Shown here: positions 4,183 to 58,061 of the stretch, in pieces
Numbering within the stretch: the first letter of the stretch is position 1
Layout: each line of letters opens with the position of its first letter
Virus record (IMG/VR): IMGVR_UViG_3300024308_000302
Location: 62,001 to 126,000 of that record
Reading direction: 5' to 3' (one strand)
Length of the DNA: 64,000 bases
Program-made: the position numbers and the translations under genes
The notes under the pieces: model-generated
Databases searched by the model: none
Told to the model about the DNA's origin: nothing
The model's input: the letters and a program-made list of their open reading frames with translations, nothing else

Positions 4183-5316
4183 TTAACCAGCGTCTTCGGT
4201 AGTCACACCAAGTGCTCCAAGGTCTACTTCGTCTAAAGACCAGTCAGACAAGTGATTACGAGAATAGAAAGTCAAGTAATCGTTTTTGAAGCCTCGAACC
4301 GCATTCATCACAAAAGAGAACTGTGGATGACCTTTCAGAGCAATTGCAACATCTTTGATAGGTTGGCCAACAAATTGCTTAGCAATTTCGTGGACTTCTT
4401 TATCAAGGTTTTCAATATGAGCCTTGATGCTATCATTGATATGATGAATGGTAGTCAAATCTGCTTCTGGTGCGTTCAATGCTAAGTAAGCAATATAATC
4501 ATCAAGTTTCTCTTCGACAACCAGTCGGGCAATGTCACGCTGACGAACAAAGGTAACAGCATGGTGCAATTCCATATACCATTTGGTTTTGATTTTAACC
4601 ATTTCACCATTCGCAAATTGAATTACATAACCTTCAATACCTTGAACAGTATTCAGCGACTTGATAAGGCTTGGCAAATCATAACCAACACCAAACAGCG
4701 GCTTGTTAACTGGAATATCAAACTTTGCAGCCAAAATTTCTTTTTCAACTGGCATGAGATATTCACCAGTGATATTGTCACGAACATGAAGCAAAGTCAT
4801 GTTTTCTTCGTCATATCGCAGAACAATACGATGGCTTGGCGAAGTGAACTCGAAAATAGGCGAAAGATTTGCCATCGAGCAATATTTAGTGAAATCGTAG
4901 TATTTCTGGTTTTTAGCAACAAACCCTTCTGATGCAACAGCAACATCAGATTTGAACGATTTTTTCGATTTCGCAAAGAACTGACCGTTCAGGAAACCAG
5001 CCGAAATCATCGAGCCGTCCATTTTGTCAAAACCCGCAACCATCGTATCCCAATTCAATACAGCGGGTTGAACTTCTGCACGCTCTGCAAGGTTGAAGAA
5101 TTTGTGCAGTGGGCGGGAAAGAATTTTGCCATCAGCATCAAAAGCGATACCACGGGCTTCTTTTTCCATCGGAGTGGTGAAGGACTCACCATTGCTGATA
5201 TTGTAGCAAATGACAGTAGCGTCATTCGATTGTTTGTTGATGCCAATGTATTCCTTATGTTGAACATGAGGAAGCATATCGTTGATGGTTTCGATACGTG
5301 GGAAGATACTGGGCAT
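4183..5316 (-). CDS. rnlA: T4 Rnl1-like RNA ligase
   Basis: Nucleotidyltransferase motifs KMDGS (I), EGYVI (IV), VKIK (V), plus KFFN and IFEF. Confidence 0.9.
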   Translation of the reverse strand: MPSIFPRIETINDMLPHVQHKEYIGINKQSNDATVICYNISNGESFTTPMEKEARGIAFDADGKILSRPLHKFFNLAERAEVQPAVLNWDTMVAGFDKMDGSMISAGFLNGQFFAKSKKSFKSDVAVASEGFVAKNQKYYDFTKYCSMANLSPIFEFTSPSHRIVLRYDEENMTLLHVRDNITGEYLMPVEKEILAAKFDIPVNKPLFGVGYDLPSLIKSLNTVQGIEGYVIQFANGEMVKIKTKWYMELHHAVTFVRQRDIARLVVEEKLDDYIAYLALNAPEADLTTIHHINDSIKAHIENLDKEVHEIAKQFVGQPIKDVAIALKGHPQFSFVMNAVRGFKNDYLTFYSRNHLSDWSLDEVDLGALGVTTEDAG

Positions 5317-22254: not shown

Positions 22255-22686
22255 TTATGCACCAATTTGAATAGCATCTGGATGCTGTTCAAAACTGATT
22301 TTTTTATCTTCAACAACTTCTGCTGGTACATTATGTACGTTATCAAAATTGTGATACATTTCGAAAATACGAACAGGAATTTTTACTTCATTTGCAAAAT
22401 CAAGCAATTCTTGCATTTCTTGAAGTTTGGTATAAGTATTGCTTACAACAACAGAATGAGCGTCCAGCAGAGCATTTACAGCGTTCTGAAAACATGCATC
22501 TTTAGCGGCTTGATGGAAAGCAAAGTCAAATTTGTAGACGCCATTGGCATCAGTAAAGAAGCTATCATTTTCAAAATGCTTGTAACCTTTCTCAACAAAT
22601 TGTTTTGAAAAAGTCGTTTTTCCACTGCCGGGATGACCACGGACAATAACCAGTTCTTGATGAGAAGGAATAGATACAGAATTCAT
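22255..22686 (-). CDS. P-loop kinase (AAA_33 / polynucleotide-kinase-like)
   Basis: Walker A GHPGSGKTT, VVVSNT, HNVP. Confidence 0.85.
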   Translation of the reverse strand: MNSVSIPSHQELVIVRGHPGSGKTTFSKQFVEKGYKHFENDSFFTDANGVYKFDFAFHQAAKDACFQNAVNALLDAHSVVVSNTYTKLQEMQELLDFANEVKIPVRIFEMYHNFDNVHNVPAEVVEDKKISFEQHPDAIQIGA

Positions 22687-22751
22687 GATGAACACCTTAT
22701 GTTAATTTTTAAGAATTATAGCACAAAAGAAAGCTTTGGCCAACAAAAATA

Positions 22752-25238: not shown

Positions 25239-25361
25239 TGGTGGTTTTTAGGGGTTCGAACCCATCAATTAAGCCGTAGCCCAAAAGTTCTCTGTTAAAC
25301 ATACCCGAAAACAAATTCCAAGAACTATCTAGATCATTCAAAGTCTTTGCCAGAGAAAACC
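25239..25361 (-). ncRNA. 123 nt tRNA-like RNA
   Basis: GGTTTT/AAAACC acceptor-like stem, GGGTTCGAACCC T-arm, ACCA end, own promoter and terminator; no cloverleaf middle. Confidence 0.6.
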
Positions 25362-25408
25362 ATAAAACATATACTATCAAAAATCGATCTTAGATACAAG
25401 CATTTTTT

Positions 25409-42484: not shown

Positions 42485-43351
42485 ATGATTAAACTATTAC
42501 ATATTGCTATGATGGCAATAACTTTGACGCCAATTTCTTTTGCTGGATATACTATTAAAATACCTTTAGATAGTAGTCATATCAATATGGGAAATAATCA
42601 ACCAACTAACCCGACTAATCCAACTACACCATCAAAAAGTTATGATGACTTTTTAGAAGATCTATTTGCTAATAACACTGGATTCCAAGATAAATATAAT
42701 AACTTATGTAGTCAATATGAAGGCGGAGTAAGAACAGATTATGTGCCATCAGATGATGGAATAATTGATGTGAATGCTAACTGTGTTCAATTCCCCGGTT
42801 ATGATTTTTCTGGTAAAACATTCGCAGATGCAGCTATTGGTTGGGCCAGTTTCATTGGTGCAGATCTAAGTAATATACAGATGTCTGAGTTATATATGGA
42901 ATATACAGATTTTTCAGATGCTAACTTATCTAATGCTGTTGTAAATAATGGAGCCTTCAACTACGCAAGTTTTGATGGTACTAATATGTCATCAGCACAA
43001 TTTAATAATCCAAGTTTTATTGATTCATCTTTTGTTGATACCAATTTATCAAATGCTACTTTTGCAACAAACACAACTGTAAATTCATCTACTTTTGAAA
43101 ATGCAAATCTAAGTGGTGCAACATTTGAAGGTAACAACTCATTAAGAGGAACAACATTTACAAACTCTAATTTAAGTGGCGTAACATTTGGAGCAGGAAC
43201 AGGTTTTGATAACACTATTTTTGATGGAGTTGATTTAAGAGGTGCAGTATTCAGTGACTCACTTAATATCTATGGTGCTACATTTATAAATGTCATTTAT
43301 GATGAAACTACAGTTTGGCCAAGGTGGTATACACCACCAGCATCAATGTGA
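42485..43351 (+). CDS. exported pentapeptide-repeat protein (PL-motif family)
   Basis: Signal peptide, GYTIKIPLD, TNP linker, A(D/N)LS.A.F pentapeptide repeats. Confidence 0.88.
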   Translation: MIKLLHIAMMAITLTPISFAGYTIKIPLDSSHINMGNNQPTNPTNPTTPSKSYDDFLEDLFANNTGFQDKYNNLCSQYEGGVRTDYVPSDDGIIDVNANCVQFPGYDFSGKTFADAAIGWASFIGADLSNIQMSELYMEYTDFSDANLSNAVVNNGAFNYASFDGTNMSSAQFNNPSFIDSSFVDTNLSNATFATNTTVNSSTFENANLSGATFEGNNSLRGTTFTNSNLSGVTFGAGTGFDNTIFDGVDLRGAVFSDSLNIYGATFINVIYDETTVWPRWYTPPASM

Positions 43352-43382: not shown

Positions 43383-43394
43383 TGTGTTACTTAG

Positions 43395-43465
43395 CAAAGT
43401 GGCAGGATTTAAACCTACAACCTCCACTCGGTTAGAGTGGCTATCTGACATTGATATACACTTTA
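43395..43465 (-). ncRNA. tRNA-like element without CCA
   Basis: Full cloverleaf: TAAAGTG/CACTTTG, TATC/GATA, CCACT-CTAACCG-AGTGG, GTAGG-TTTAAAT-CCTGC; lacks D-loop GG and T-loop C. Confidence 0.6.
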
Positions 43466-43489
43466 CCTGTTCCGGCGTTTCAGCCTAAA

Positions 43490-43568
43490 CCCATATCAGT
43501 GATGGGACTTGAACCCATGACCTTCTCTCTTCAGAGATTATCTACCGACTGATATACACCTTTATGGG
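43490..43568 (-). ncRNA. tRNA-like element with extended acceptor stem and 4 nt anticodon loop
   Basis: TATC-AGTCGGTA-GATA, TCTCT-GAAG-AGAGA, ATGGG-TTCAAGT-CCCAT, GGTG/CACT plus CCCATA/TATGGG. Confidence 0.6.
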
Positions 43569-50171: not shown

Positions 50172-51301
50172 TTGACATCCACCCCATAGCTAAAGCAAGG
50201 AGATTCCTTCCGCAAGACGGCCATGCCCGACCGCAAGAATGTTAATGGCTGCGTTTACATCTCGTTGATGTATGCCACCGCATACATCACATTTCCATTC
50301 TCTTATTCGCAGCCCATCTAATCCTTTCGGCCCAGTTAAAGACTTACAAAGATGACAGGTGCGGGTTGTGTCTCTTTCGTCAACATTATTATCTAGTAGT
50401 ATGCCTGCGTTATCGCATTTATTTTTCAGCATACTTCTAATCAGGCCAAAGCCTGCATCTAATGTTGACTTTCCTCTTTTTGCTTTGAGCATTTTCTTAA
50501 TGCTCAAATCTCCAACATAAATCTCACTAAAATTTTTGACTAAATTTGTAGTGAATTTATGTAGAGAGTCTTTTCTAATATTAGCAATTTTAGCATGAAT
50601 ATTACGAACTCTTTTTTTATTATTAGCTCTTTGTTGAACTTTTAATTGTTTTTCATATTGTCTATAAACTTGATTATATTTAGTTTCACTTCCATCACTA
50701 GCCGTAGCAGAAGCTTTGAACCCAAGATCAACACCAACAGCCCCTTGACCAGACGACAATACTCTTGGTACTTCAACAACAACATTGAAGTACCAACGAC
50801 CACGAGCATCTTCATTAAAAGAAGCATTTTTAAATTCGTATTTTGACAGTTCATAACTGTCAAATACTGAATAATATTGCTTATTGAAATAAACTTGACC
50901 ATTCACCCAAGAAGCTGCTTTTGAGTTTATTGGAATCCAACCAAGACTTCTTCTTGATCCAAATGTTTTTCGCCATTTGAGTTTTTGTTTTTTAAACTGT
51001 TTTCTTCGAGTAGCATATTCTTTACAAATGGATTGAATGGTTTGACTATGCAAACCAAGTTCTTTAGCAGAACCATTGGTATATTTTTGCAGATCATAAT
51101 TTGAAAGAAACTTTTTATGTTCAACTATGTTTCTATGACTTAATTCATTAAGATAATTCCAAACAAAATTAACGTTCTTAGCCATCTGGCAAAGAACGTT
51201 TTTATGTTTATCTTTAACTCTAACTTTTAGAGTTTTTGTTGTATATTCGGAATTATTCATAGGTGAAATTATAGATTAAAATAAGAAAAAAGTCAATAGT
51301 T
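50172..51301 (-). mobile_element. IS200/IS605-family tnpB-only element
   Basis: Right end GGAATCTCC...GGGGTGGATGTCAA overlapping the tnpB stop; no tnpA; left end uncertain. Confidence 0.75.
50190..51260 (-). CDS. tnpB: RNA-guided endonuclease TnpB (rearranged RuvC type)
   Basis: VDLG, IYVGDL, VDERDTT, CHLC...CDVC Zn finger, RDVNAA. Confidence 0.93.
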   Translation of the reverse strand: MNNSEYTTKTLKVRVKDKHKNVLCQMAKNVNFVWNYLNELSHRNIVEHKKFLSNYDLQKYTNGSAKELGLHSQTIQSICKEYATRRKQFKKQKLKWRKTFGSRRSLGWIPINSKAASWVNGQVYFNKQYYSVFDSYELSKYEFKNASFNEDARGRWYFNVVVEVPRVLSSGQGAVGVDLGFKASATASDGSETKYNQVYRQYEKQLKVQQRANNKKRVRNIHAKIANIRKDSLHKFTTNLVKNFSEIYVGDLSIKKMLKAKRGKSTLDAGFGLIRSMLKNKCDNAGILLDNNVDERDTTRTCHLCKSLTGPKGLDGLRIREWKCDVCGGIHQRDVNAAINILAVGHGRLAEGISLL

Positions 51302-52088: not shown

Positions 52089-52221
52089 AATAAACTCCAA
52101 ATAAATTAGCCTTCAAATTGAATGGATTATAACATAAAAAAGAAAAATTGACAACAAAAAAGCCTACTAGATCACTCTAATAGGCTTCTTTGTAAAGGCT
52201 TTCCACCTTATACGGAAGGTT

Positions 52222-52352
52222 TGGTGCGTATATGCCCACACAGGTCACGAACTGTTGCCAGTCTGGTAGCCACTTCACTATTGAACCAATGTCTTAACCA
52301 TAAAGGGATACGGGCACTGATTCTCAATATGTCACAGTTAGAACTATACTGC
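52222..52352 (-). ncRNA. ~131 nt CCA-ended structured RNA
   Basis: GC(A)GTAT/ATACGC+ACCA; D-arm-like GTTCT/AGAAT; long arm GTGCCC/GGGCAT. Confidence 0.55.
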
Positions 52353-52415
52353 AGCACCTTTGTTTCAAGTTCATATAGGCCATCGAGACAGCCATTCACA
52401 AAGGTTAATACAAAT

Positions 52416-52510
52416 TGGCAGGCTGGTCTGGCCTCGAACCAGAAACTTCCACTCACTCGTGGTGTTTTACCAGAGATCCTATGGCGGATCTATTTTAAAC
52501 TACTCAACCT
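52416..52510 (-). ncRNA. 95 nt aberrant tRNA (Trp-like ends)
   Basis: AGG...CCTGCCA; T-arm TCTGG-TTCGAGG-CCAGA; hairpin inserted in D-loop; 6 nt anticodon loop. Confidence 0.6.
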
Positions 52511-52545
52511 ATTAAATCATAAGACCTACACTATCAAGCAAAAAC

Positions 52546-52651
52546 TGGTGGAAGCGGAAGGATTCGAACCTCCGTGCGGCAAGGTATAGGTTGGTAACAC
52601 CACCCCTCCGCTTAGTTACCTCAGAGTTAAGCCAGACTACTCTACACTTCC
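52546..52651 (-). ncRNA. 106 nt aberrant tRNA with expanded anticodon arm
   Basis: GGAAGTG/CGCTTCC+ACCA, GAGT/ACTC D-arm, GGAGG-TTCGAAT-CCTTC T-arm, ~50 nt between D and T arms. Confidence 0.7.
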
Positions 52652-52667
52652 ATAATTTGTACAGGGC

Positions 52668-52742
52668 TGGTGGTTAAGCTTGGTTTACCTGTGTGACCAA
52701 TTTGAATGGAAGTGTTCCAATTACACTTGCATTCACCACTAC
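52668..52742 (-). ncRNA. degenerate tRNA-sized structured RNA
   Basis: D-arm GTGT-AATTGGA-ACAC, GAATG/CATTC, ACCA end; no T-loop. Confidence 0.4.
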
Positions 52743-52791
52743 TGATCTGGCATAAGCCATTTCTATAAGCAAATATGCATATCTGCTAAAC

Positions 52792-52869
52792 TGGTTGCGG
52801 GAGCAGGATTTGAACCTGCGATCTCCAGCCAATGAAGCTGGTGAGTTAACCGGACTACTCCATCCCGCG
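52792..52869 (-). tRNA. tRNA-Met(CAT), fMet-like acceptor
   Basis: 78 nt cloverleaf with C1:A72 mismatch, anticodon loop TTCATTG, encoded CCA. Confidence 0.88.
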
Positions 52870-52880
52870 TCAAATTTGTT

Positions 52881-52950
52881 CGCAGCACTAAGCCACTTGA
52901 CCTTCGCCCCTAACCTACGCTTGGCCCGGATGAACCTGATGTTCATCTCC
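52881..52950 (-). ncRNA. three-hairpin RNA motif, copy 2
   Basis: GATGAAC/GTTCATC; GGCC-AAGCGT...GGGGCG-AA-GGTC; GTGGC/GCTGC. Confidence 0.5.
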
Positions 52951-53015
52951 CGTATAAAAAAGAGCCGGTTCACCCAACCGTTTTATTTAGACATGTTACT
53001 TATCATCTAAATCTC

Positions 53016-53114: not shown

Positions 53115-53143
53115 AGTATAGCAAAATCCAATCTTCATGTCAA
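53115..53143 (-). promoter_or_regulatory. sigma70 promoter of the RNA operon
   Basis: TTGACA-17-TATACT with TG-C extension. Confidence 0.8.
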
Positions 53144-55524: not shown

Positions 55525-56478
55525 TCAAATGATTTTGAATTTTTTTACACCACCAAGAGAAAAATGAGCTATTTTGAAGTCCACCAACCTATACAGCAAG
55601 TCCAAAGTATAAGCAGAATCGTTGCCAGCATTATGAAGATAGCTTGAAAAATGGTTGACTTTAAGAGCTTTCAAAGCATCTTTAAGCGAAATATAATGAT
55701 TTTTGGCTGATTTTGCTGCAATGGATTCACATTCATTATAAATAACAGAAGATGTATCAATACATTTAATATGTTCAATTTGAGTCATATCAAAATTACA
55801 ATGACGCAAAATTTTGAATTCAATAGGTAATGCGTGACCAATAATAAAATCAACATCTTTTAGATGCTCAATGAGGATTGGGGCAAAATCATCATGAGTT
55901 ACGAGCACAGATGTGCCAAATTTGAAAGTGTCCATTCGTTTTTTAGTTGTTGTATAGTGAAAATGATTAACAACGCCATCAAAAGAAATAGTGACGCCCA
56001 TTTCAAAGATTTCTATTTTTTTTGATGAATCACGATATTCAAAATCAAGGGAAAGAATCTTTTTTCCTTCCAAGCTAATAGGAAGGGGAGATTCAAATTT
56101 TTCTGCAAATGCAGCTTTCTTTTCTTTGCGAACAGCAATACGTTTTTGTTCAATATCATTGAAAATAAGTTTGAATTCTTCATGGGAAGAAACATCAAAA
56201 AATTCAAGTTTTTCTTTTGAAAATTTTGCATACTTTTTGAATGCTGTAACTTTAAGTTCCAAAGAAAATAAACTATTTACATAATCAATAATTGGAATCA
56301 AAGAATTTTTTCCAATATGAATTTTATCTTCAAATATACAGAAAGAAGAAACAAGACCTTTATCAAAAAGATCTTGTTCATTGAAAACAGATTTAAATTG
56401 TGAAGCCAAATCACGATTTTCAATAAAAATAGATTGATTTAAAAAAGTAGATTTGAGAACTGCAAAGTTATAAATCAT
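55525..56478 (-). CDS. DEDDh 3'-5' exonuclease domain protein
   Basis: LDFEY, IIGH, IDTS, HNAGNDSAYT. Confidence 0.85.
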   Translation of the reverse strand: MIYNFAVLKSTFLNQSIFIENRDLASQFKSVFNEQDLFDKGLVSSFCIFEDKIHIGKNSLIPIIDYVNSLFSLELKVTAFKKYAKFSKEKLEFFDVSSHEEFKLIFNDIEQKRIAVRKEKKAAFAEKFESPLPISLEGKKILSLDFEYRDSSKKIEIFEMGVTISFDGVVNHFHYTTTKKRMDTFKFGTSVLVTHDDFAPILIEHLKDVDFIIGHALPIEFKILRHCNFDMTQIEHIKCIDTSSVIYNECESIAAKSAKNHYISLKDALKALKVNHFSSYLHNAGNDSAYTLDLLYRLVDFKIAHFSLGGVKKFKII

Positions 56479-56596
56479 GGTTAATCCTATTTTCATTAAT
56501 CAAAGGAATTTAAATAATTAATGCATTATAGCATAGGCTGGAGAAAAAGACCAACAAAAAAGGGCCGACTGGCCCTCTCTGAAACTTTTTTGATGT

Positions 56597-56993: not shown

Positions 56994-58061
56994 TCAGAAT
57001 GAATAAATATTCATTTTAGGAAGTTCCCAAAGATAAGGTGCAATTTTAATACGTTTCTTTTGAATATTATAAGGATGCTCAATAAATTCAACCATTTGAA
57101 GAACAGCCATCAAAGTATAAGCCGCATCATTACCAGCATTATGCAAAATCAAAGAGTTATGTTCAATTTTCAAAATATGAAGCATATTTGACAAAGAAAC
57201 AGATTTATTTTTCATGTTTTCAAAGTAAAAATTGAAACGAGATTTCATTAGACCTTGAGAATCAATTACTTTCAGGTTATCAATAGACAGAATATCAATA
57301 CCATGATGTTTGAGAACAATATGTTCACTTGAAACAGAATGGCCAATAAGGTAATCAACATTAAGCAAGCGATCTTTAACAATAATCAACAATTCTTGAA
57401 CTGTAACAAATTGACTGTTACCAAACAGAAACTTATTACTTACATCTTTAGGATAGTGGTTCTCACCAATAGTGTCATTAACAATATAATGCTCATAGCT
57501 AATGACACCATCCTTAAAAATAGCCATACCACATTCCAAAATCGTCCAGTCTTTATTGGAATCAAACTCAAAATCAATAGCCATGATACGATTTGACTTG
57601 AAATTGGCAGATAACTGACTATTGAGTTTTTCTGTAATTTGAATTTTTTCTATACTTTCGGCTTTCTTTTCTTCTTTAATAGCAGCCCGAACAGCATCTT
57701 TACTTTCTTTATGCTCACCATTCATATTGAAACGAATTTGCTCAACAGCATCTTCAAATGTCAAGTAATCAGAAACTGTAAATGCAATTTCAGCTTTAGT
57801 TGATTGCGGGTCTTGAATATCAAATCCAAATTGATTTTTAATAGCATTCATGATTTTTGCAAGTTGCATTTCATCAAAAAGAATTGTTGAGCTTTTAGAA
57901 ACATAAAGTTCATCAACAAAATCTTTTTTTGCAACTTTAGAAAGCTTATAATTTTCCATGAAATCTGCAAAGACAATTTTTCTTTCTTTTTTAGTCTTAA
58001 ATTGATCAATCAAGCTTTCTTTGAAAGCTACTTGAACAGAGTTCCAGAAATAAAGGTTCAT
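56994..58061 (-). CDS. DEDDh 3'-5' exonuclease domain protein (paralogue of 55525..56478)
   Basis: IDFEF, LIGH, IDSQ, HNAGNDAAYT. Confidence 0.85.
   Translation of the reverse strand: MNLYFWNSVQVAFKESLIDQFKTKKERKIVFADFMENYKLSKVAKKDFVDELYVSKSSTILFDEMQLAKIMNAIKNQFGFDIQDPQSTKAEIAFTVSDYLTFEDAVEQIRFNMNGEHKESKDAVRAAIKEEKKAESIEKIQITEKLNSQLSANFKSNRIMAIDFEFDSNKDWTILECGMAIFKDGVISYEHYIVNDTIGENHYPKDVSNKFLFGNSQFVTVQELLIIVKDRLLNVDYLIGHSVSSEHIVLKHHGIDILSIDNLKVIDSQGLMKSRFNFYFENMKNKSVSLSNMLHILKIEHNSLILHNAGNDAAYTLMAVLQMVEFIEHPYNIQKKRIKIAPYLWELPKMNIYSF

What the first reader, a model, noticed from the sequence alone, without database searches (positions are those of the whole stretch)
52546..52651. 106 nt tRNA with intact acceptor, D and T arms but a 32 nt anticodon loop
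GAGGT/ACCTT can form the anticodon stem around 32 nt that fold into a further GGTGGT/ACCAACC hairpin. The D-arm nearly duplicates that of the neighbouring Met tRNA. If the extra 25 nt were excised after position 37 the loop would read AA-CTA-A-T (amber-reading but lacking U33); this is speculative but testable because an RNA ligase is encoded in the window.
Basis: partly seen in the sequence, partly recalled or inferred. Interest (0 to 1): 0.6.

Follow-up and report, generated by a model that had tools for sequence, protein, structure and literature searches.

The report
Conserved tRNA-shaped RNA lacking an anticodon arm
A 106-base gene in a giant (pro)phage keeps every part of a tRNA except a usable anticodon arm, and it is strongly conserved in a distant relative, so it is most likely a working non-decoding tRNA look-alike rather than a spliced amber suppressor or a dead gene.

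Summary
The element is real: window 52546-52651, minus strand. It has a 7-bp acceptor stem, A73 and an encoded CCA. The D and T arms are intact and carry the usual tertiary nucleotides. ARAGORN finds it only in intron mode, with no hit in 5.8 Mb of shuffled genome.

About 50 nt sit where 23 belong. A different long arm (GCGG/CCGC, apical loop GUUACCA) is 5-6 kcal/mol better in both known copies.

Splicing to an amber reader is not supported:
- There is no bulge-helix-bulge motif.
- The 290-kb record has no splicing endonuclease or RtcB.
- Every 7-nt loop obtainable by one excision has A33.
- The genome already has two normal CTA tRNAs, and TAG is not recoded.

One diverged copy (L014) is 93% identical, insert included. 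Shared protein genes are only 44-49% identical at four-fold sites, so a pseudogene is unlikely.

The element lies in a roughly 1-kb promoter-to-terminator block of structured RNAs, next to other aberrant tRNA-like genes.

Best reading: a non-decoding tRNA-derived RNA, comparable to T4 species 1 RNA. Its function is inferred, not shown. No usable RNA reads covered it.

The parts
52546..52651 (-). e1: the 106-nt tRNA-like gene (genome 114546-114651). Element position p = window 52652-p.
   Evidence: Identical in four other assemblies. 93% identical in L014.
52645..52651 (-). Acceptor 5' strand, GGAAGTG (positions 1-7)
   Evidence: Pairs 7/7 with positions 96-102. Unchanged in L014.
52624..52642 (-). 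D arm, GAGT / AGTCTGGCTTA / ACTC (positions 10-28)
   Evidence: In L014 only the D loop changes (2-nt deletion and T18C).
52574..52623 (-). Central region, positions 29-78: 50 nt where a tRNA has about 23. Either GAGGT/ACCTT closes a 32-nt loop (positions 35-66 = window 52586-52617), or a 12-nt linker is followed by the long arm 41-76 with apical loop GUUACCA.
52557..52573 (-). T arm, GGAGG-TTCGAAT-CCTTC (positions 79-95)
   Evidence: The G80-U94 pair becomes A-U in L014.
52546..52556 (-). Acceptor 3' strand CGCTTCC, discriminator A, encoded CCA. Followed by GTTTT, as at many tRNAs of this genome.
53115..53143 (-). Sigma-70-type promoter TTGACA-17-TATACT (extended -10) at the head of the non-coding block
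   Evidence: L014 has TTGACG-17-TAGAAT at the equivalent place, read directly from the L014 sequence.
52154..52193 (-). Intrinsic terminator closing the block. A weaker terminator-like hairpin lies at 52963-52979.
52792..52869 (-). Neighbouring tRNA-Met(CAT), 56 bits, with the non-canonical loop TTCATTG (T37)
52662..52764 (-). Element X: a structured RNA just upstream of e1, also upstream of the L014 copy, with compensatory changes
52416..52510 (-). e2: a second aberrant tRNA-like gene. Its body resembles the tRNA-Ile at genome 163284. It carries a hairpin of about 22 nt (AGATCC-GCCATA-GGATCT) inside the D loop and has a 6-nt anticodon-like loop.
4183..5316 (-). T4 Rnl1-family RNA ligase gene. 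Context only; no link to e1 has been shown.

Best explanation
e1 is a functional, non-decoding RNA derived from a tRNA.

What it keeps: the whole tRNA body, meaning the acceptor stem with A73 and encoded CCA, the D/T elbow and the T loop.

What differs: the anticodon and variable region is replaced by a conserved irregular region of about 50 nt. Its most likely form is a 12-nt single-stranded linker followed by a 36-nt arm with a 3x3 internal loop, a UAU bulge and a 7-nt apical loop.

Expression (inferred): it is transcribed as part of a roughly 1-kb block of structured RNAs, from a consensus promoter to an intrinsic terminator. It is presumably cut out like a tRNA by RNase P and 3' processing, because its ends and 3' trailer look like those of the genome's real tRNAs.

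Mode of action (inferred): it acts through its tRNA shape plus the special arm. It would be a mimic, decoy or scaffold for a factor that binds tRNA bodies, or a tRNA frame that stabilises and presents the arm. It would not read a codon.

Shown: the anatomy, the significance of the tRNA-like features, the operon setting and purifying selection on the whole element. Inferred: transcription, processing, stability and the partner.
For: 1. The tRNA body is intact and not due to chance.
2. No register gives a 5-bp stem with a 7-nt U33/R37 loop. The Rfam tRNA score is 18 bits against a 29-bit cut-off.
3. The L014 copy differs by 5 substitutions and 2 indels in 104 aligned nt. The insert has 2 substitutions and 1 indel in 32 nt. 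Two shared protein genes are 67-81% identical in amino acids and only 44-49% identical at four-fold sites. A real tRNA-Pro is 93% identical and element X is 82.5% identical.
4. The changes respect structure. The T-stem G-U becomes A-U. U53-A61 becomes U-G. The other three central changes fall in the internal loop of the long-arm fold.
5. The long-arm fold is 5-6 kcal/mol better than the anticodon-stem folds in both copies.
6. A consensus promoter and a terminator on the same strand bracket the block. The 3' trailer CCAGTTTT resembles those of other tRNAs of this genome.
7. This lineage reuses tRNA modules in non-decoding RNAs. A circularly permuted tRNA-like fold at genome 132330-132460 has 5 compensatory pairs against L014. 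e2, e4 and e5 are further oversized tRNA-like genes.
8. T4 species 1 RNA (rnaC) is likewise a tRNA-derived RNA at the end of a tRNA cluster.
Against: - There is no RNA evidence for e1. The only reads call returned assembled contigs, and the RNA-labelled runs had none over 52515-52676.
- Only one diverged homolog was found, with no double compensatory change inside e1, so the fold of the central region is undecided.
- The inner hairpin is not above chance.
- Neighbouring tRNA-like genes also have odd loops, which could mean a decaying cluster.
- A recent transfer of the RNA block between lineages would inflate the apparent conservation. Element X next to e1 has diverged 17.5%, which argues against this.
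- No partner or function is known.
Confidence: 0.5

Rival explanations
1. Intron-bearing pre-tRNA. About 23-25 nt are cut out of the anticodon region by an unknown endonuclease, the halves are sealed by the phage Rnl1 ligase (helped by the AAA_33 kinase), and the product decodes a codon (CUA amber in the reader's version; ACC or UAC in ARAGORN's placements).
For: - ARAGORN's intron mode models it.
- Rnl1 lies at window 4183-5316 and a small AAA_33 kinase at window 22363-22653.
- A closed 174-nt junction next door, in an RNA-labelled run, hints that RNA ends in this block may get joined.
Against: - I saw no bulge-helix-bulge motif when I inspected the sequence.
- No splicing endonuclease or RtcB is in the record.
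- All 7-nt loops obtainable from the GAGGT/ACCTT frame have A33. ARAGORN's own placements differ between runs (23 nt against 19 nt; Gly against Val), so they are arbitrary.
- Two normal CTA tRNAs already exist and TAG is not recoded.
- The insert is conserved like the exons.
- No joined form was seen, though coverage was absent.
Confidence: 0.07
2. Dead gene. A tRNA (with a Pro-, Tyr- or Ser-like body) had its anticodon arm wrecked by an insertion or partial duplication of tRNA-derived sequence, and has no function of its own.
For: - The central region looks like a patchwork of tRNA pieces. Positions 37-48 resemble the 3' anticodon half of the genome's tRNA-Arg(TCT) at 11 of 12 positions. Positions 41-47 and 68-76 echo the T stem.
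- The genome has about ten other tRNA-like genes with abnormal loops or inserts.
- The inner hairpin is not above chance.
Against: - It is 93% identical to L014, where four-fold sites are 44-49% identical. With that neutral rate, 29 of 31 aligned insert positions staying identical by chance has a probability of about 1e-7 (my own binomial estimate).
- All 21 body pairs are kept, with G-U changing to A-U in the T stem.
- In the near-identical strain L026, the only two changes in 1.1 kb fall in the spacer, not in e1.
- The 12-mer match to tRNA-Arg is within chance expectation for this search.
Confidence: 0.18
3. Processing punctuation. The tRNA-shaped body serves only as an RNase P / 3'-end cleavage signal that separates the neighbouring structured RNAs (X, e2) from the polycistronic transcript. 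The released e1 has no role.
For: - e1 sits between other structured RNAs in one transcription unit.
- X and e1 are neighbours in both genomes.
Against: - It does not explain conservation of the central 32-50 nt.
- In L014, about 165 nt of unrelated sequence separate X from e1.
Confidence: 0.08

Closest known systems
Phage T4 species 1 RNA (rnaC), the stable RNA at the end of the T4 tRNA cluster
   Same: Both are encoded on the tRNA strand inside or behind a tRNA cluster. Both are tRNA-derived, with a canonical T arm and an acceptor-like stem. Both have no usable anticodon loop and are oversized (139 nt against 106 nt). The function of rnaC is unknown.
   Different: There is no sequence homology beyond the 11-nt T-loop motif. 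rnaC has a 5' extension and no encoded CCA. e1 has a perfect 7-bp acceptor stem, A73 and CCA, and its extra sequence is internal.
Intron-containing pre-tRNAs of archaea and eukaryotes (intron at 37/38, bulge-helix-bulge, EndA/Sen plus ligase)
   Same: Extra sequence of 20-30 nt sits in the anticodon region of an otherwise normal cloverleaf. A ligase gene is in the genome.
   Different: There is no bulge-helix-bulge motif and no endonuclease. No canonical loop results from excision. The setting is bacterial (sigma-70 promoter, intrinsic terminators, encoded CCA). The insert is under selection.
Class II tRNA-Tyr / tRNA-Ser of phages (e.g. Sulfitobacter phage vB_SupP_AX tRNA-Tyr)
   Same: The acceptor stem GGAAGTG/CGCTTCC with A73 is identical, and the T arm is nearly identical. 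In the long-arm fold, e1's arm emerges 2 nt before the T stem, where a class II variable arm sits.
   Different: e1 has a 4-bp class I-type D stem, which is closest to its own genome's tRNA-Pro (47 bits with model R1). It has no anticodon arm, and its arm is 36 nt rather than 13-21 nt.
Bacterial Y-RNA-like YrlA and other tRNA mimics (tmRNA tRNA-like domain)
   Same: A tRNA-shaped module is used outside decoding. The same genome holds a circularly permuted tRNA-like fold of the YrlA topology.
   Different: e1 has open ends with CCA, so it is not permuted. No Ro60/TROVE gene was found. The tmRNA model scores 14.6 bits against a 47-bit cut-off, and there is no G3-U70 and no tag frame.
Engineered 'tRNA scaffold' RNAs, in which a cargo RNA replaces the anticodon stem-loop (from my own knowledge of the Ponchon and Dardel method, not checked here)
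   Same: The architecture is the same: a tRNA body provides processing and stability, and a foreign arm sits in place of the anticodon arm.
   Different: That is an artificial design. Whether e1's arm is a cargo with a partner is unknown.

Membership tests
Canonical decoding tRNA (Rfam RF00005) | Score at or above the 29-bit gathering cut-off | tested here: not met
   18.1 bits, E 0.064, and only over the 3' 61 nt. It was absent from the gathering-threshold scan, and default ARAGORN misses it.
Canonical decoding tRNA (Rfam RF00005) | 7-bp acceptor stem, discriminator, D and T arms with conserved tertiary nucleotides | tested here: met
   U8, A14, G18G19, A21, G53, T54-T55-C56-G57-A58 and C61 are all present.
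Canonical decoding tRNA (Rfam RF00005) | 5-bp anticodon stem closing a 7-nt loop with U33 and a purine at 37 | tested here: not met
   No register provides it. The apical loops on offer (GUUACCA, GUGUUAC) sit on an arm about twice the normal length.
Protein-spliced intron-containing tRNA | Bulge-helix-bulge (or relaxed BHB) at both exon-intron junctions | tested here: not met
   By my inspection of positions 35-71 and of the predicted folds. No 3-nt bulges are separated by a 4-bp helix at any junction.
Protein-spliced intron-containing tRNA | Splicing endonuclease and matching ligase available | tested here: inconclusive
   PF01974 and PF01139 are absent from the 290-kb record. Rnl1 is present. 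The host genome could not be searched.
Protein-spliced intron-containing tRNA | A joined, shorter RNA exists | tested here: inconclusive
   The single reads call gave contigs only. The RNA-labelled runs had no coverage of 52515-52676.
Group I intron in a tRNA anticodon loop (the bacterial and phage type) | Ribozyme core of roughly 200 nt or more, with an Rfam match | tested here: not met
   The insert is 25-32 nt. There is no intron family hit at gathering threshold or at E<=10.
tmRNA (RF00023) | Score at or above 47 bits, G3-U70, tag reading frame | tested here: not met
   14.6 bits. Position 3-70 is A-U. ARAGORN finds no tmRNA.
tRNA pseudogene | Evolves at about the neutral rate | tested here: not met
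   93% identity against 44-49% at four-fold sites in the same pair of genomes. This rests on one homolog only.
T4 species-1-like tRNA-derived stable RNA | tRNA-derived, non-decoding, encoded in a tRNA cluster on the same strand | tested here: met
T4 species-1-like tRNA-derived stable RNA | Sequence homology to rnaC, and stable accumulation during infection | tested here: not met
   The only shared sequence is the T-loop 11-mer. Accumulation cannot be tested with these tools.

The most novel reading that the evidence does not exclude
The tRNA-like genes of this block may be substrates of a phage-borne cut-and-join RNA pathway (Rnl1 plus kinase). Their inserted arms would be cleaved and the ends re-ligated, yielding re-joined tRNA-like molecules and small circular RNAs.

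The one hint is a closed 174-nt junction (window 52484 joined to 52311). It starts in the loop of the hairpin inserted in e2 and was seen in a contig of an RNA-labelled wastewater run. If this is right, e1's conserved arm would be a processing module, and this would be protein-dependent tRNA-type splicing or circularisation in a bacterial virus.
Probability: 0.07. Interest if true: 0.85.

Novelty: new variant of a known kind. Interest (0 to 1): 0.45.

Why it matters
Phage tRNA clusters are usually read as codon supplements or as replacements for tRNAs that host defences cut. Here a tRNA gene has lost decoding ability yet stays under strong selection, with its whole non-tRNA arm conserved. It sits beside other re-engineered tRNA modules: a hairpin in a D loop, and a circularly permuted tRNA fold elsewhere in the genome.

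This suggests that large phages use the tRNA body as a general-purpose frame for small RNAs, or as bait for proteins that bind tRNA. That would give T4's long-unexplained species 1 and 2 RNAs some company, and a comparative handle.

It also shows that intron-mode tRNA finders can mislabel such genes as spliced tRNAs.

Tried and rejected
Searches for homologs:
- GenBank phages by blastn gave only tRNA-end matches.
- Seven exact or degenerate pattern scans of IMG/VR gave none.
- Two scans of GTDB genomes gave none.
- One gapped scan of JGI metagenomes gave the source contig plus one real relative, L014.

Synteny route:
- Five IMG/VR relatives share the upstream 384-aa gene but lack the RNA block.
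- They carry only 4-5 tRNAs each.
- Model R1 finds no e1-like gene in them.

Exact-protein look-ups returned only near-identical strains.

Ideas rejected:
- Amber recoding. TAG is 6% of stops, and read-through lengths are ordinary.
- tmRNA, YrlA and ribozyme identities. There are no Rfam hits and no TROVE gene.
- The TnpB guide RNA. TnpB lies at 50190-51260(-), and its guide RNA would lie downstream of its 3' end, about 2.3 kb from e1.
- A base-pairing target for the insert in the phage genome. The 12-mer hits are at chance level.
- A tandem repeat as the cause of the 174-nt junction. This genome has no tandem repeat and no e2/Z homology there. A relative could still have one.

Other limits:
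- I did not build or search a joined (spliced) sequence. Hypothetical loops were only read off the sequence.
- The host contig (1.54 Mb) is not held by the genome tools.

Full report
WHERE IT LIES. The window is bases 62001-126000 of a 290,157-bp virus record that IMG/VR classes as a provirus. CheckV rates it 96% complete and its GC content is 32%. The record is cut from a 1.54-Mb metagenome contig. The same region lies in a 0.81-Mb contig of an independent assembly. Its nearest cultured kin are jumbo phages: the Rnl1 ligase is 40% identical to that of Ralstonia phage RsoM2USA. Twenty DNA runs from 11 studies hold near-identical sequence.

THE OBSERVATION. On the minus strand, 52651->52546 reads as follows:
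- a 7-bp acceptor stem (GGAAGTG/CGCTTCC, one G-U), A73 and an encoded CCA
- U8
- a 4-bp D arm with A14, G18G19 and A21
- a T arm, GGAGG-TTCGAAT-CCTTC

Default ARAGORN and the Rfam gathering scan miss it. The Rfam tRNA model reaches only 18.1 bits. ARAGORN in intron mode calls exactly this one additional gene in the genome, and nothing in 5.8 Mb of shuffled genome. So the tRNA-like body is real. The D arm nearly copies that of the tRNA-Met 140 nt upstream. An Rnl1-type ligase is encoded at 4183-5316(-).

THE CENTRAL REGION. Fifty nucleotides (positions 29-78) lie where a class I tRNA has about 23. However, the hairpin is not better than shuffles (p about 0.2). A register shifted by two (GGTAA/TTGCC) is equally good.

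RNAfold and RNAalifold prefer another fold:
- a 12-nt linker
- then an arm made of 41-44/73-76 (GCGG/CCGC), a 3x3 internal loop, 48-50/67-69, a UAU bulge and 51-53/61-63
- topped by a 7-nt loop, GUUACCA

With the acceptor, D and T arms fixed, this fold is 5-6 kcal/mol better in both known copies. No register yields a normal anticodon stem-loop. ARAGORN's intron placements change with its settings (23 nt and Gly-ACC; 19 nt and Val-TAC), so they carry no information.

THE SPLICING AND AMBER IDEA.
- I saw no bulge-helix-bulge at any candidate junction when I inspected the sequence.
- The insert is an order of magnitude too short for a group I intron, and no Rfam family matches.
- The record has no tRNA splicing endonuclease and no RtcB. 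It has Rnl1 and a small AAA_33 kinase.
- Every 7-nt loop that one excision between GAGGT and ACCTT can give (AACCTAT, AACTTAT, AACTAAT, AACTAAG) has A33.
- The genome already carries two canonical CTA tRNAs with CTCTAAA loops.
- TAG is a rare but ordinary stop: 18 of 294 long minus-strand frames, with ordinary read-through lengths. I therefore name no other genetic code.

CONSERVATION. One diverged relative was found: L014, a 7-kb contig of NCBI assembly GCA_013565755.1. Its copy is cut at position 104 by the contig end. It differs from e1 as follows:
- T18C and a 2-nt deletion in the D loop
- deletion of A45
- G47T, A61G, G72A and G80A

All 21 pairs of the body are kept, and G80-U94 becomes A-U. 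In the long-arm fold, A61G keeps the pair (U-A to U-G), and the three other central changes fall in the internal loop.

Two protein genes shared by the two genomes are 81% and 67% identical in amino acids, and only 49% and 44% identical at four-fold degenerate sites. Against that background:
- e1 is 93% identical overall
- its insert has 2 substitutions in 31 aligned positions
- a genuine tRNA-Pro is 93% identical
- the neighbouring structured RNA X is 82.5% identical

So e1 is under strong purifying selection, insert included. In a near-identical strain (L026), the only two changes in 1.1 kb lie in the spacer after e1. This argues against a pseudogene and against a discarded intron. It rests on a single homolog, and I found no double compensatory change within e1.

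SETTING. A consensus promoter (TTGACA-17-TATACT, 53143-53115) and an intrinsic terminator (52193-52154) on the same strand bracket about 1 kb without plausible genes. The block contains, in order:
- a leader RNA
- a 114-nt repeat, with a 95% copy at genome 129842-129954
- tRNA-Met, with the odd loop TTCATTG
- X
- e1
- e2
- a 76-nt repeat
- a further structured stretch

X shows compensatory changes against L014: TGGTG/CACCA becomes CGAGG/TCTCG, and AAGTGT/ACACTT becomes AAGTAT/ATACTT.

e2 has the body of the genome's tRNA-Ile, but with a perfect 6-bp hairpin inserted in its D loop and a 6-nt anticodon-like loop.

Elsewhere the genome holds:
- 35 standard tRNAs, including twelve Leu-TAA
- about ten aberrant ones, with loops of 6, 8 or 9 nt, or with inserts of 35-100 nt
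- a circularly permuted tRNA-like fold at genome 132330-132460, with five compensatory pairs against L014

This lineage evidently reuses tRNA modules in RNAs that cannot decode.

ORIGIN (weak inference). The acceptor stem with A73 is identical to that of a Sulfitobacter phage tRNA-Tyr, and the T arm is nearly so. Both are close to those of phage tRNA-Ser genes. Within its own genome the body is closest to tRNA-Pro(TGG). Positions 37-48 resemble the 3' anticodon half of the genome's tRNA-Arg(TCT), but that match is within chance expectation.

READS.
- DNA runs X12 and X17 carry e1 unchanged.
- The two RNA-labelled runs had no contig over e1, so expression and splicing remain untested.
- X18 (labelled RNA, which the tool marks as a guess) holds a 204-nt contig that is a closed 174-nt cycle joining 52484 to 52311, at depth 17 against about 5-7.5 for the run's other contigs of the region.
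- On the minus strand this cycle starts in the loop of e2's inserted hairpin.
- This genome has no tandem repeat there.
- It could be a circular RNA, a tandem array in a relative or an assembly effect. I leave it unexplained.

VERDICT. The splicing and amber suppressor interpretation is not supported. The best explanation (confidence 0.5) is a conserved, non-decoding, tRNA-derived RNA that uses the tRNA body for processing and recognition and presents a specialised arm. It is a new variant of the kind represented by T4 species 1 RNA. The partner and the function are inferred, not shown.

Noticed in passing
window 52311-52484 (minus strand; overlaps e2 at 52416-52510): Run X18 (labelled RNA-Seq, wastewater; Logan contigs) holds a 204-nt contig that is a closed 174-nt cycle joining 52484 to 52311, at depth 17 against about 5-7.5 for the run's other contigs of the region. 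The junction lies in the loop of the hairpin inserted in e2's D loop, and 3 nt (CCG) fit both sides. It could be a circular RNA, a tandem array in a relative or an assembly effect.
   Followed up: partly
window 52416-52510 (-): e2 is a tRNA-like gene. Its 3' half aligns with the genome's tRNA-Ile(GAT) at 163284. It carries a perfect hairpin, AGATCC-GCCATA-GGATCT, inside the D loop, has a 6-nt anticodon-like loop and ends in an encoded CCA.
   Followed up: partly
window 52662-52764 (-) and L014 6701-6803: Element X is an unclassified structured RNA of about 100 nt upstream of e1. It is 82.5% identical in L014, with compensatory changes in two helices. It includes a 6-bp stem with a 7-nt loop and a TTCAAAT T-loop-like hairpin. 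There is no Rfam match.
   Followed up: partly
window 52792-52869 (-): The neighbouring tRNA-Met(CAT) has the non-canonical anticodon loop TTCATTG (pyrimidine at 37). Its 86% paralog at genome 126236 has the normal CTCATAA.
   Followed up: no
window 52880-52993 and 52331-52406 (-): Two non-coding repeats flank tRNA-like genes. A 114-nt unit (terminator-like hairpin plus conserved tail) has a 95% copy at genome 129842-129954. A 76-nt unit with an inverted repeat ACCTTTGT/ACAAAGGT has an 83% copy at 126651-126726, upstream of tRNA-Asn.
   Followed up: no
genome 132330-132460 (-), outside the window (L019 226-366); L014 4444-4580: A circularly permuted tRNA-like fold: T arm, then acceptor 3' strand, loop, acceptor 5' strand, then a Leu-type D arm, closed by a 10-bp helix. 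It has five compensatory pairs against L014. It has a YrlA-like topology, but there is no TROVE/Ro60 gene in the record and no Rfam hit.
   Followed up: partly
window 25240-25370 (-); genome 39660-39826 and 129991-130104 (-): Further oversized tRNA-like genes (131, 167 and 114 nt) have a T arm and acceptor end with CCA but no normal anticodon arm. The first has its own promoter-like site and terminator, and the second is followed by a terminator.
   Followed up: partly
window 43393-43466 and 43494-43563 (-); genome 35401, 125975, 129761, 163041, 163284: Other tRNA genes have abnormal anticodon loops: 6-nt CGGAAA, 8-nt ATTTTGCC, 9-nt CTGTGTAGG (a GTA loop with two extra bases), TAAGACA and GCGATTA. 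Some lack CCA.
   Followed up: no
genome 179840-179914 and 180849-180923 (-), outside the window: Two canonical tRNAs with anticodon CTA (amber-reading) sit in a genome where TAG shows no sign of recoding. The genome also has twelve tRNA-Leu(TAA), six tRNA(CAT) and four tRNA-Arg(TCT).
   Followed up: partly
window 50190-51260 (-): A TnpB (OrfB_IS605 plus Cas12f1-like TNB domains; PHROG transposase, E 3e-68) lies two genes downstream of the RNA block. Its guide RNA was not looked for.
   Followed up: no
window 55525-56496 and 56994-58061 (-); 42485-43351 (+); 22255-22695 (-): Two paralogous DEDDh exonuclease-like genes, a pentapeptide-repeat protein on the opposite strand, and a small AAA_33 kinase that could serve RNA-end healing beside Rnl1.
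   Followed up: no
whole record: The 290-kb 'provirus' lies at about 268-558 kb of a 1.54-Mb contig and in a 0.81-Mb contig of another assembly. It is therefore integrated in, or assembled with, a much larger genome whose identity could not be examined. Relatives sharing 68-81% identical proteins have only 4-5 tRNAs in their 50-59% complete fragments.
   Followed up: partly
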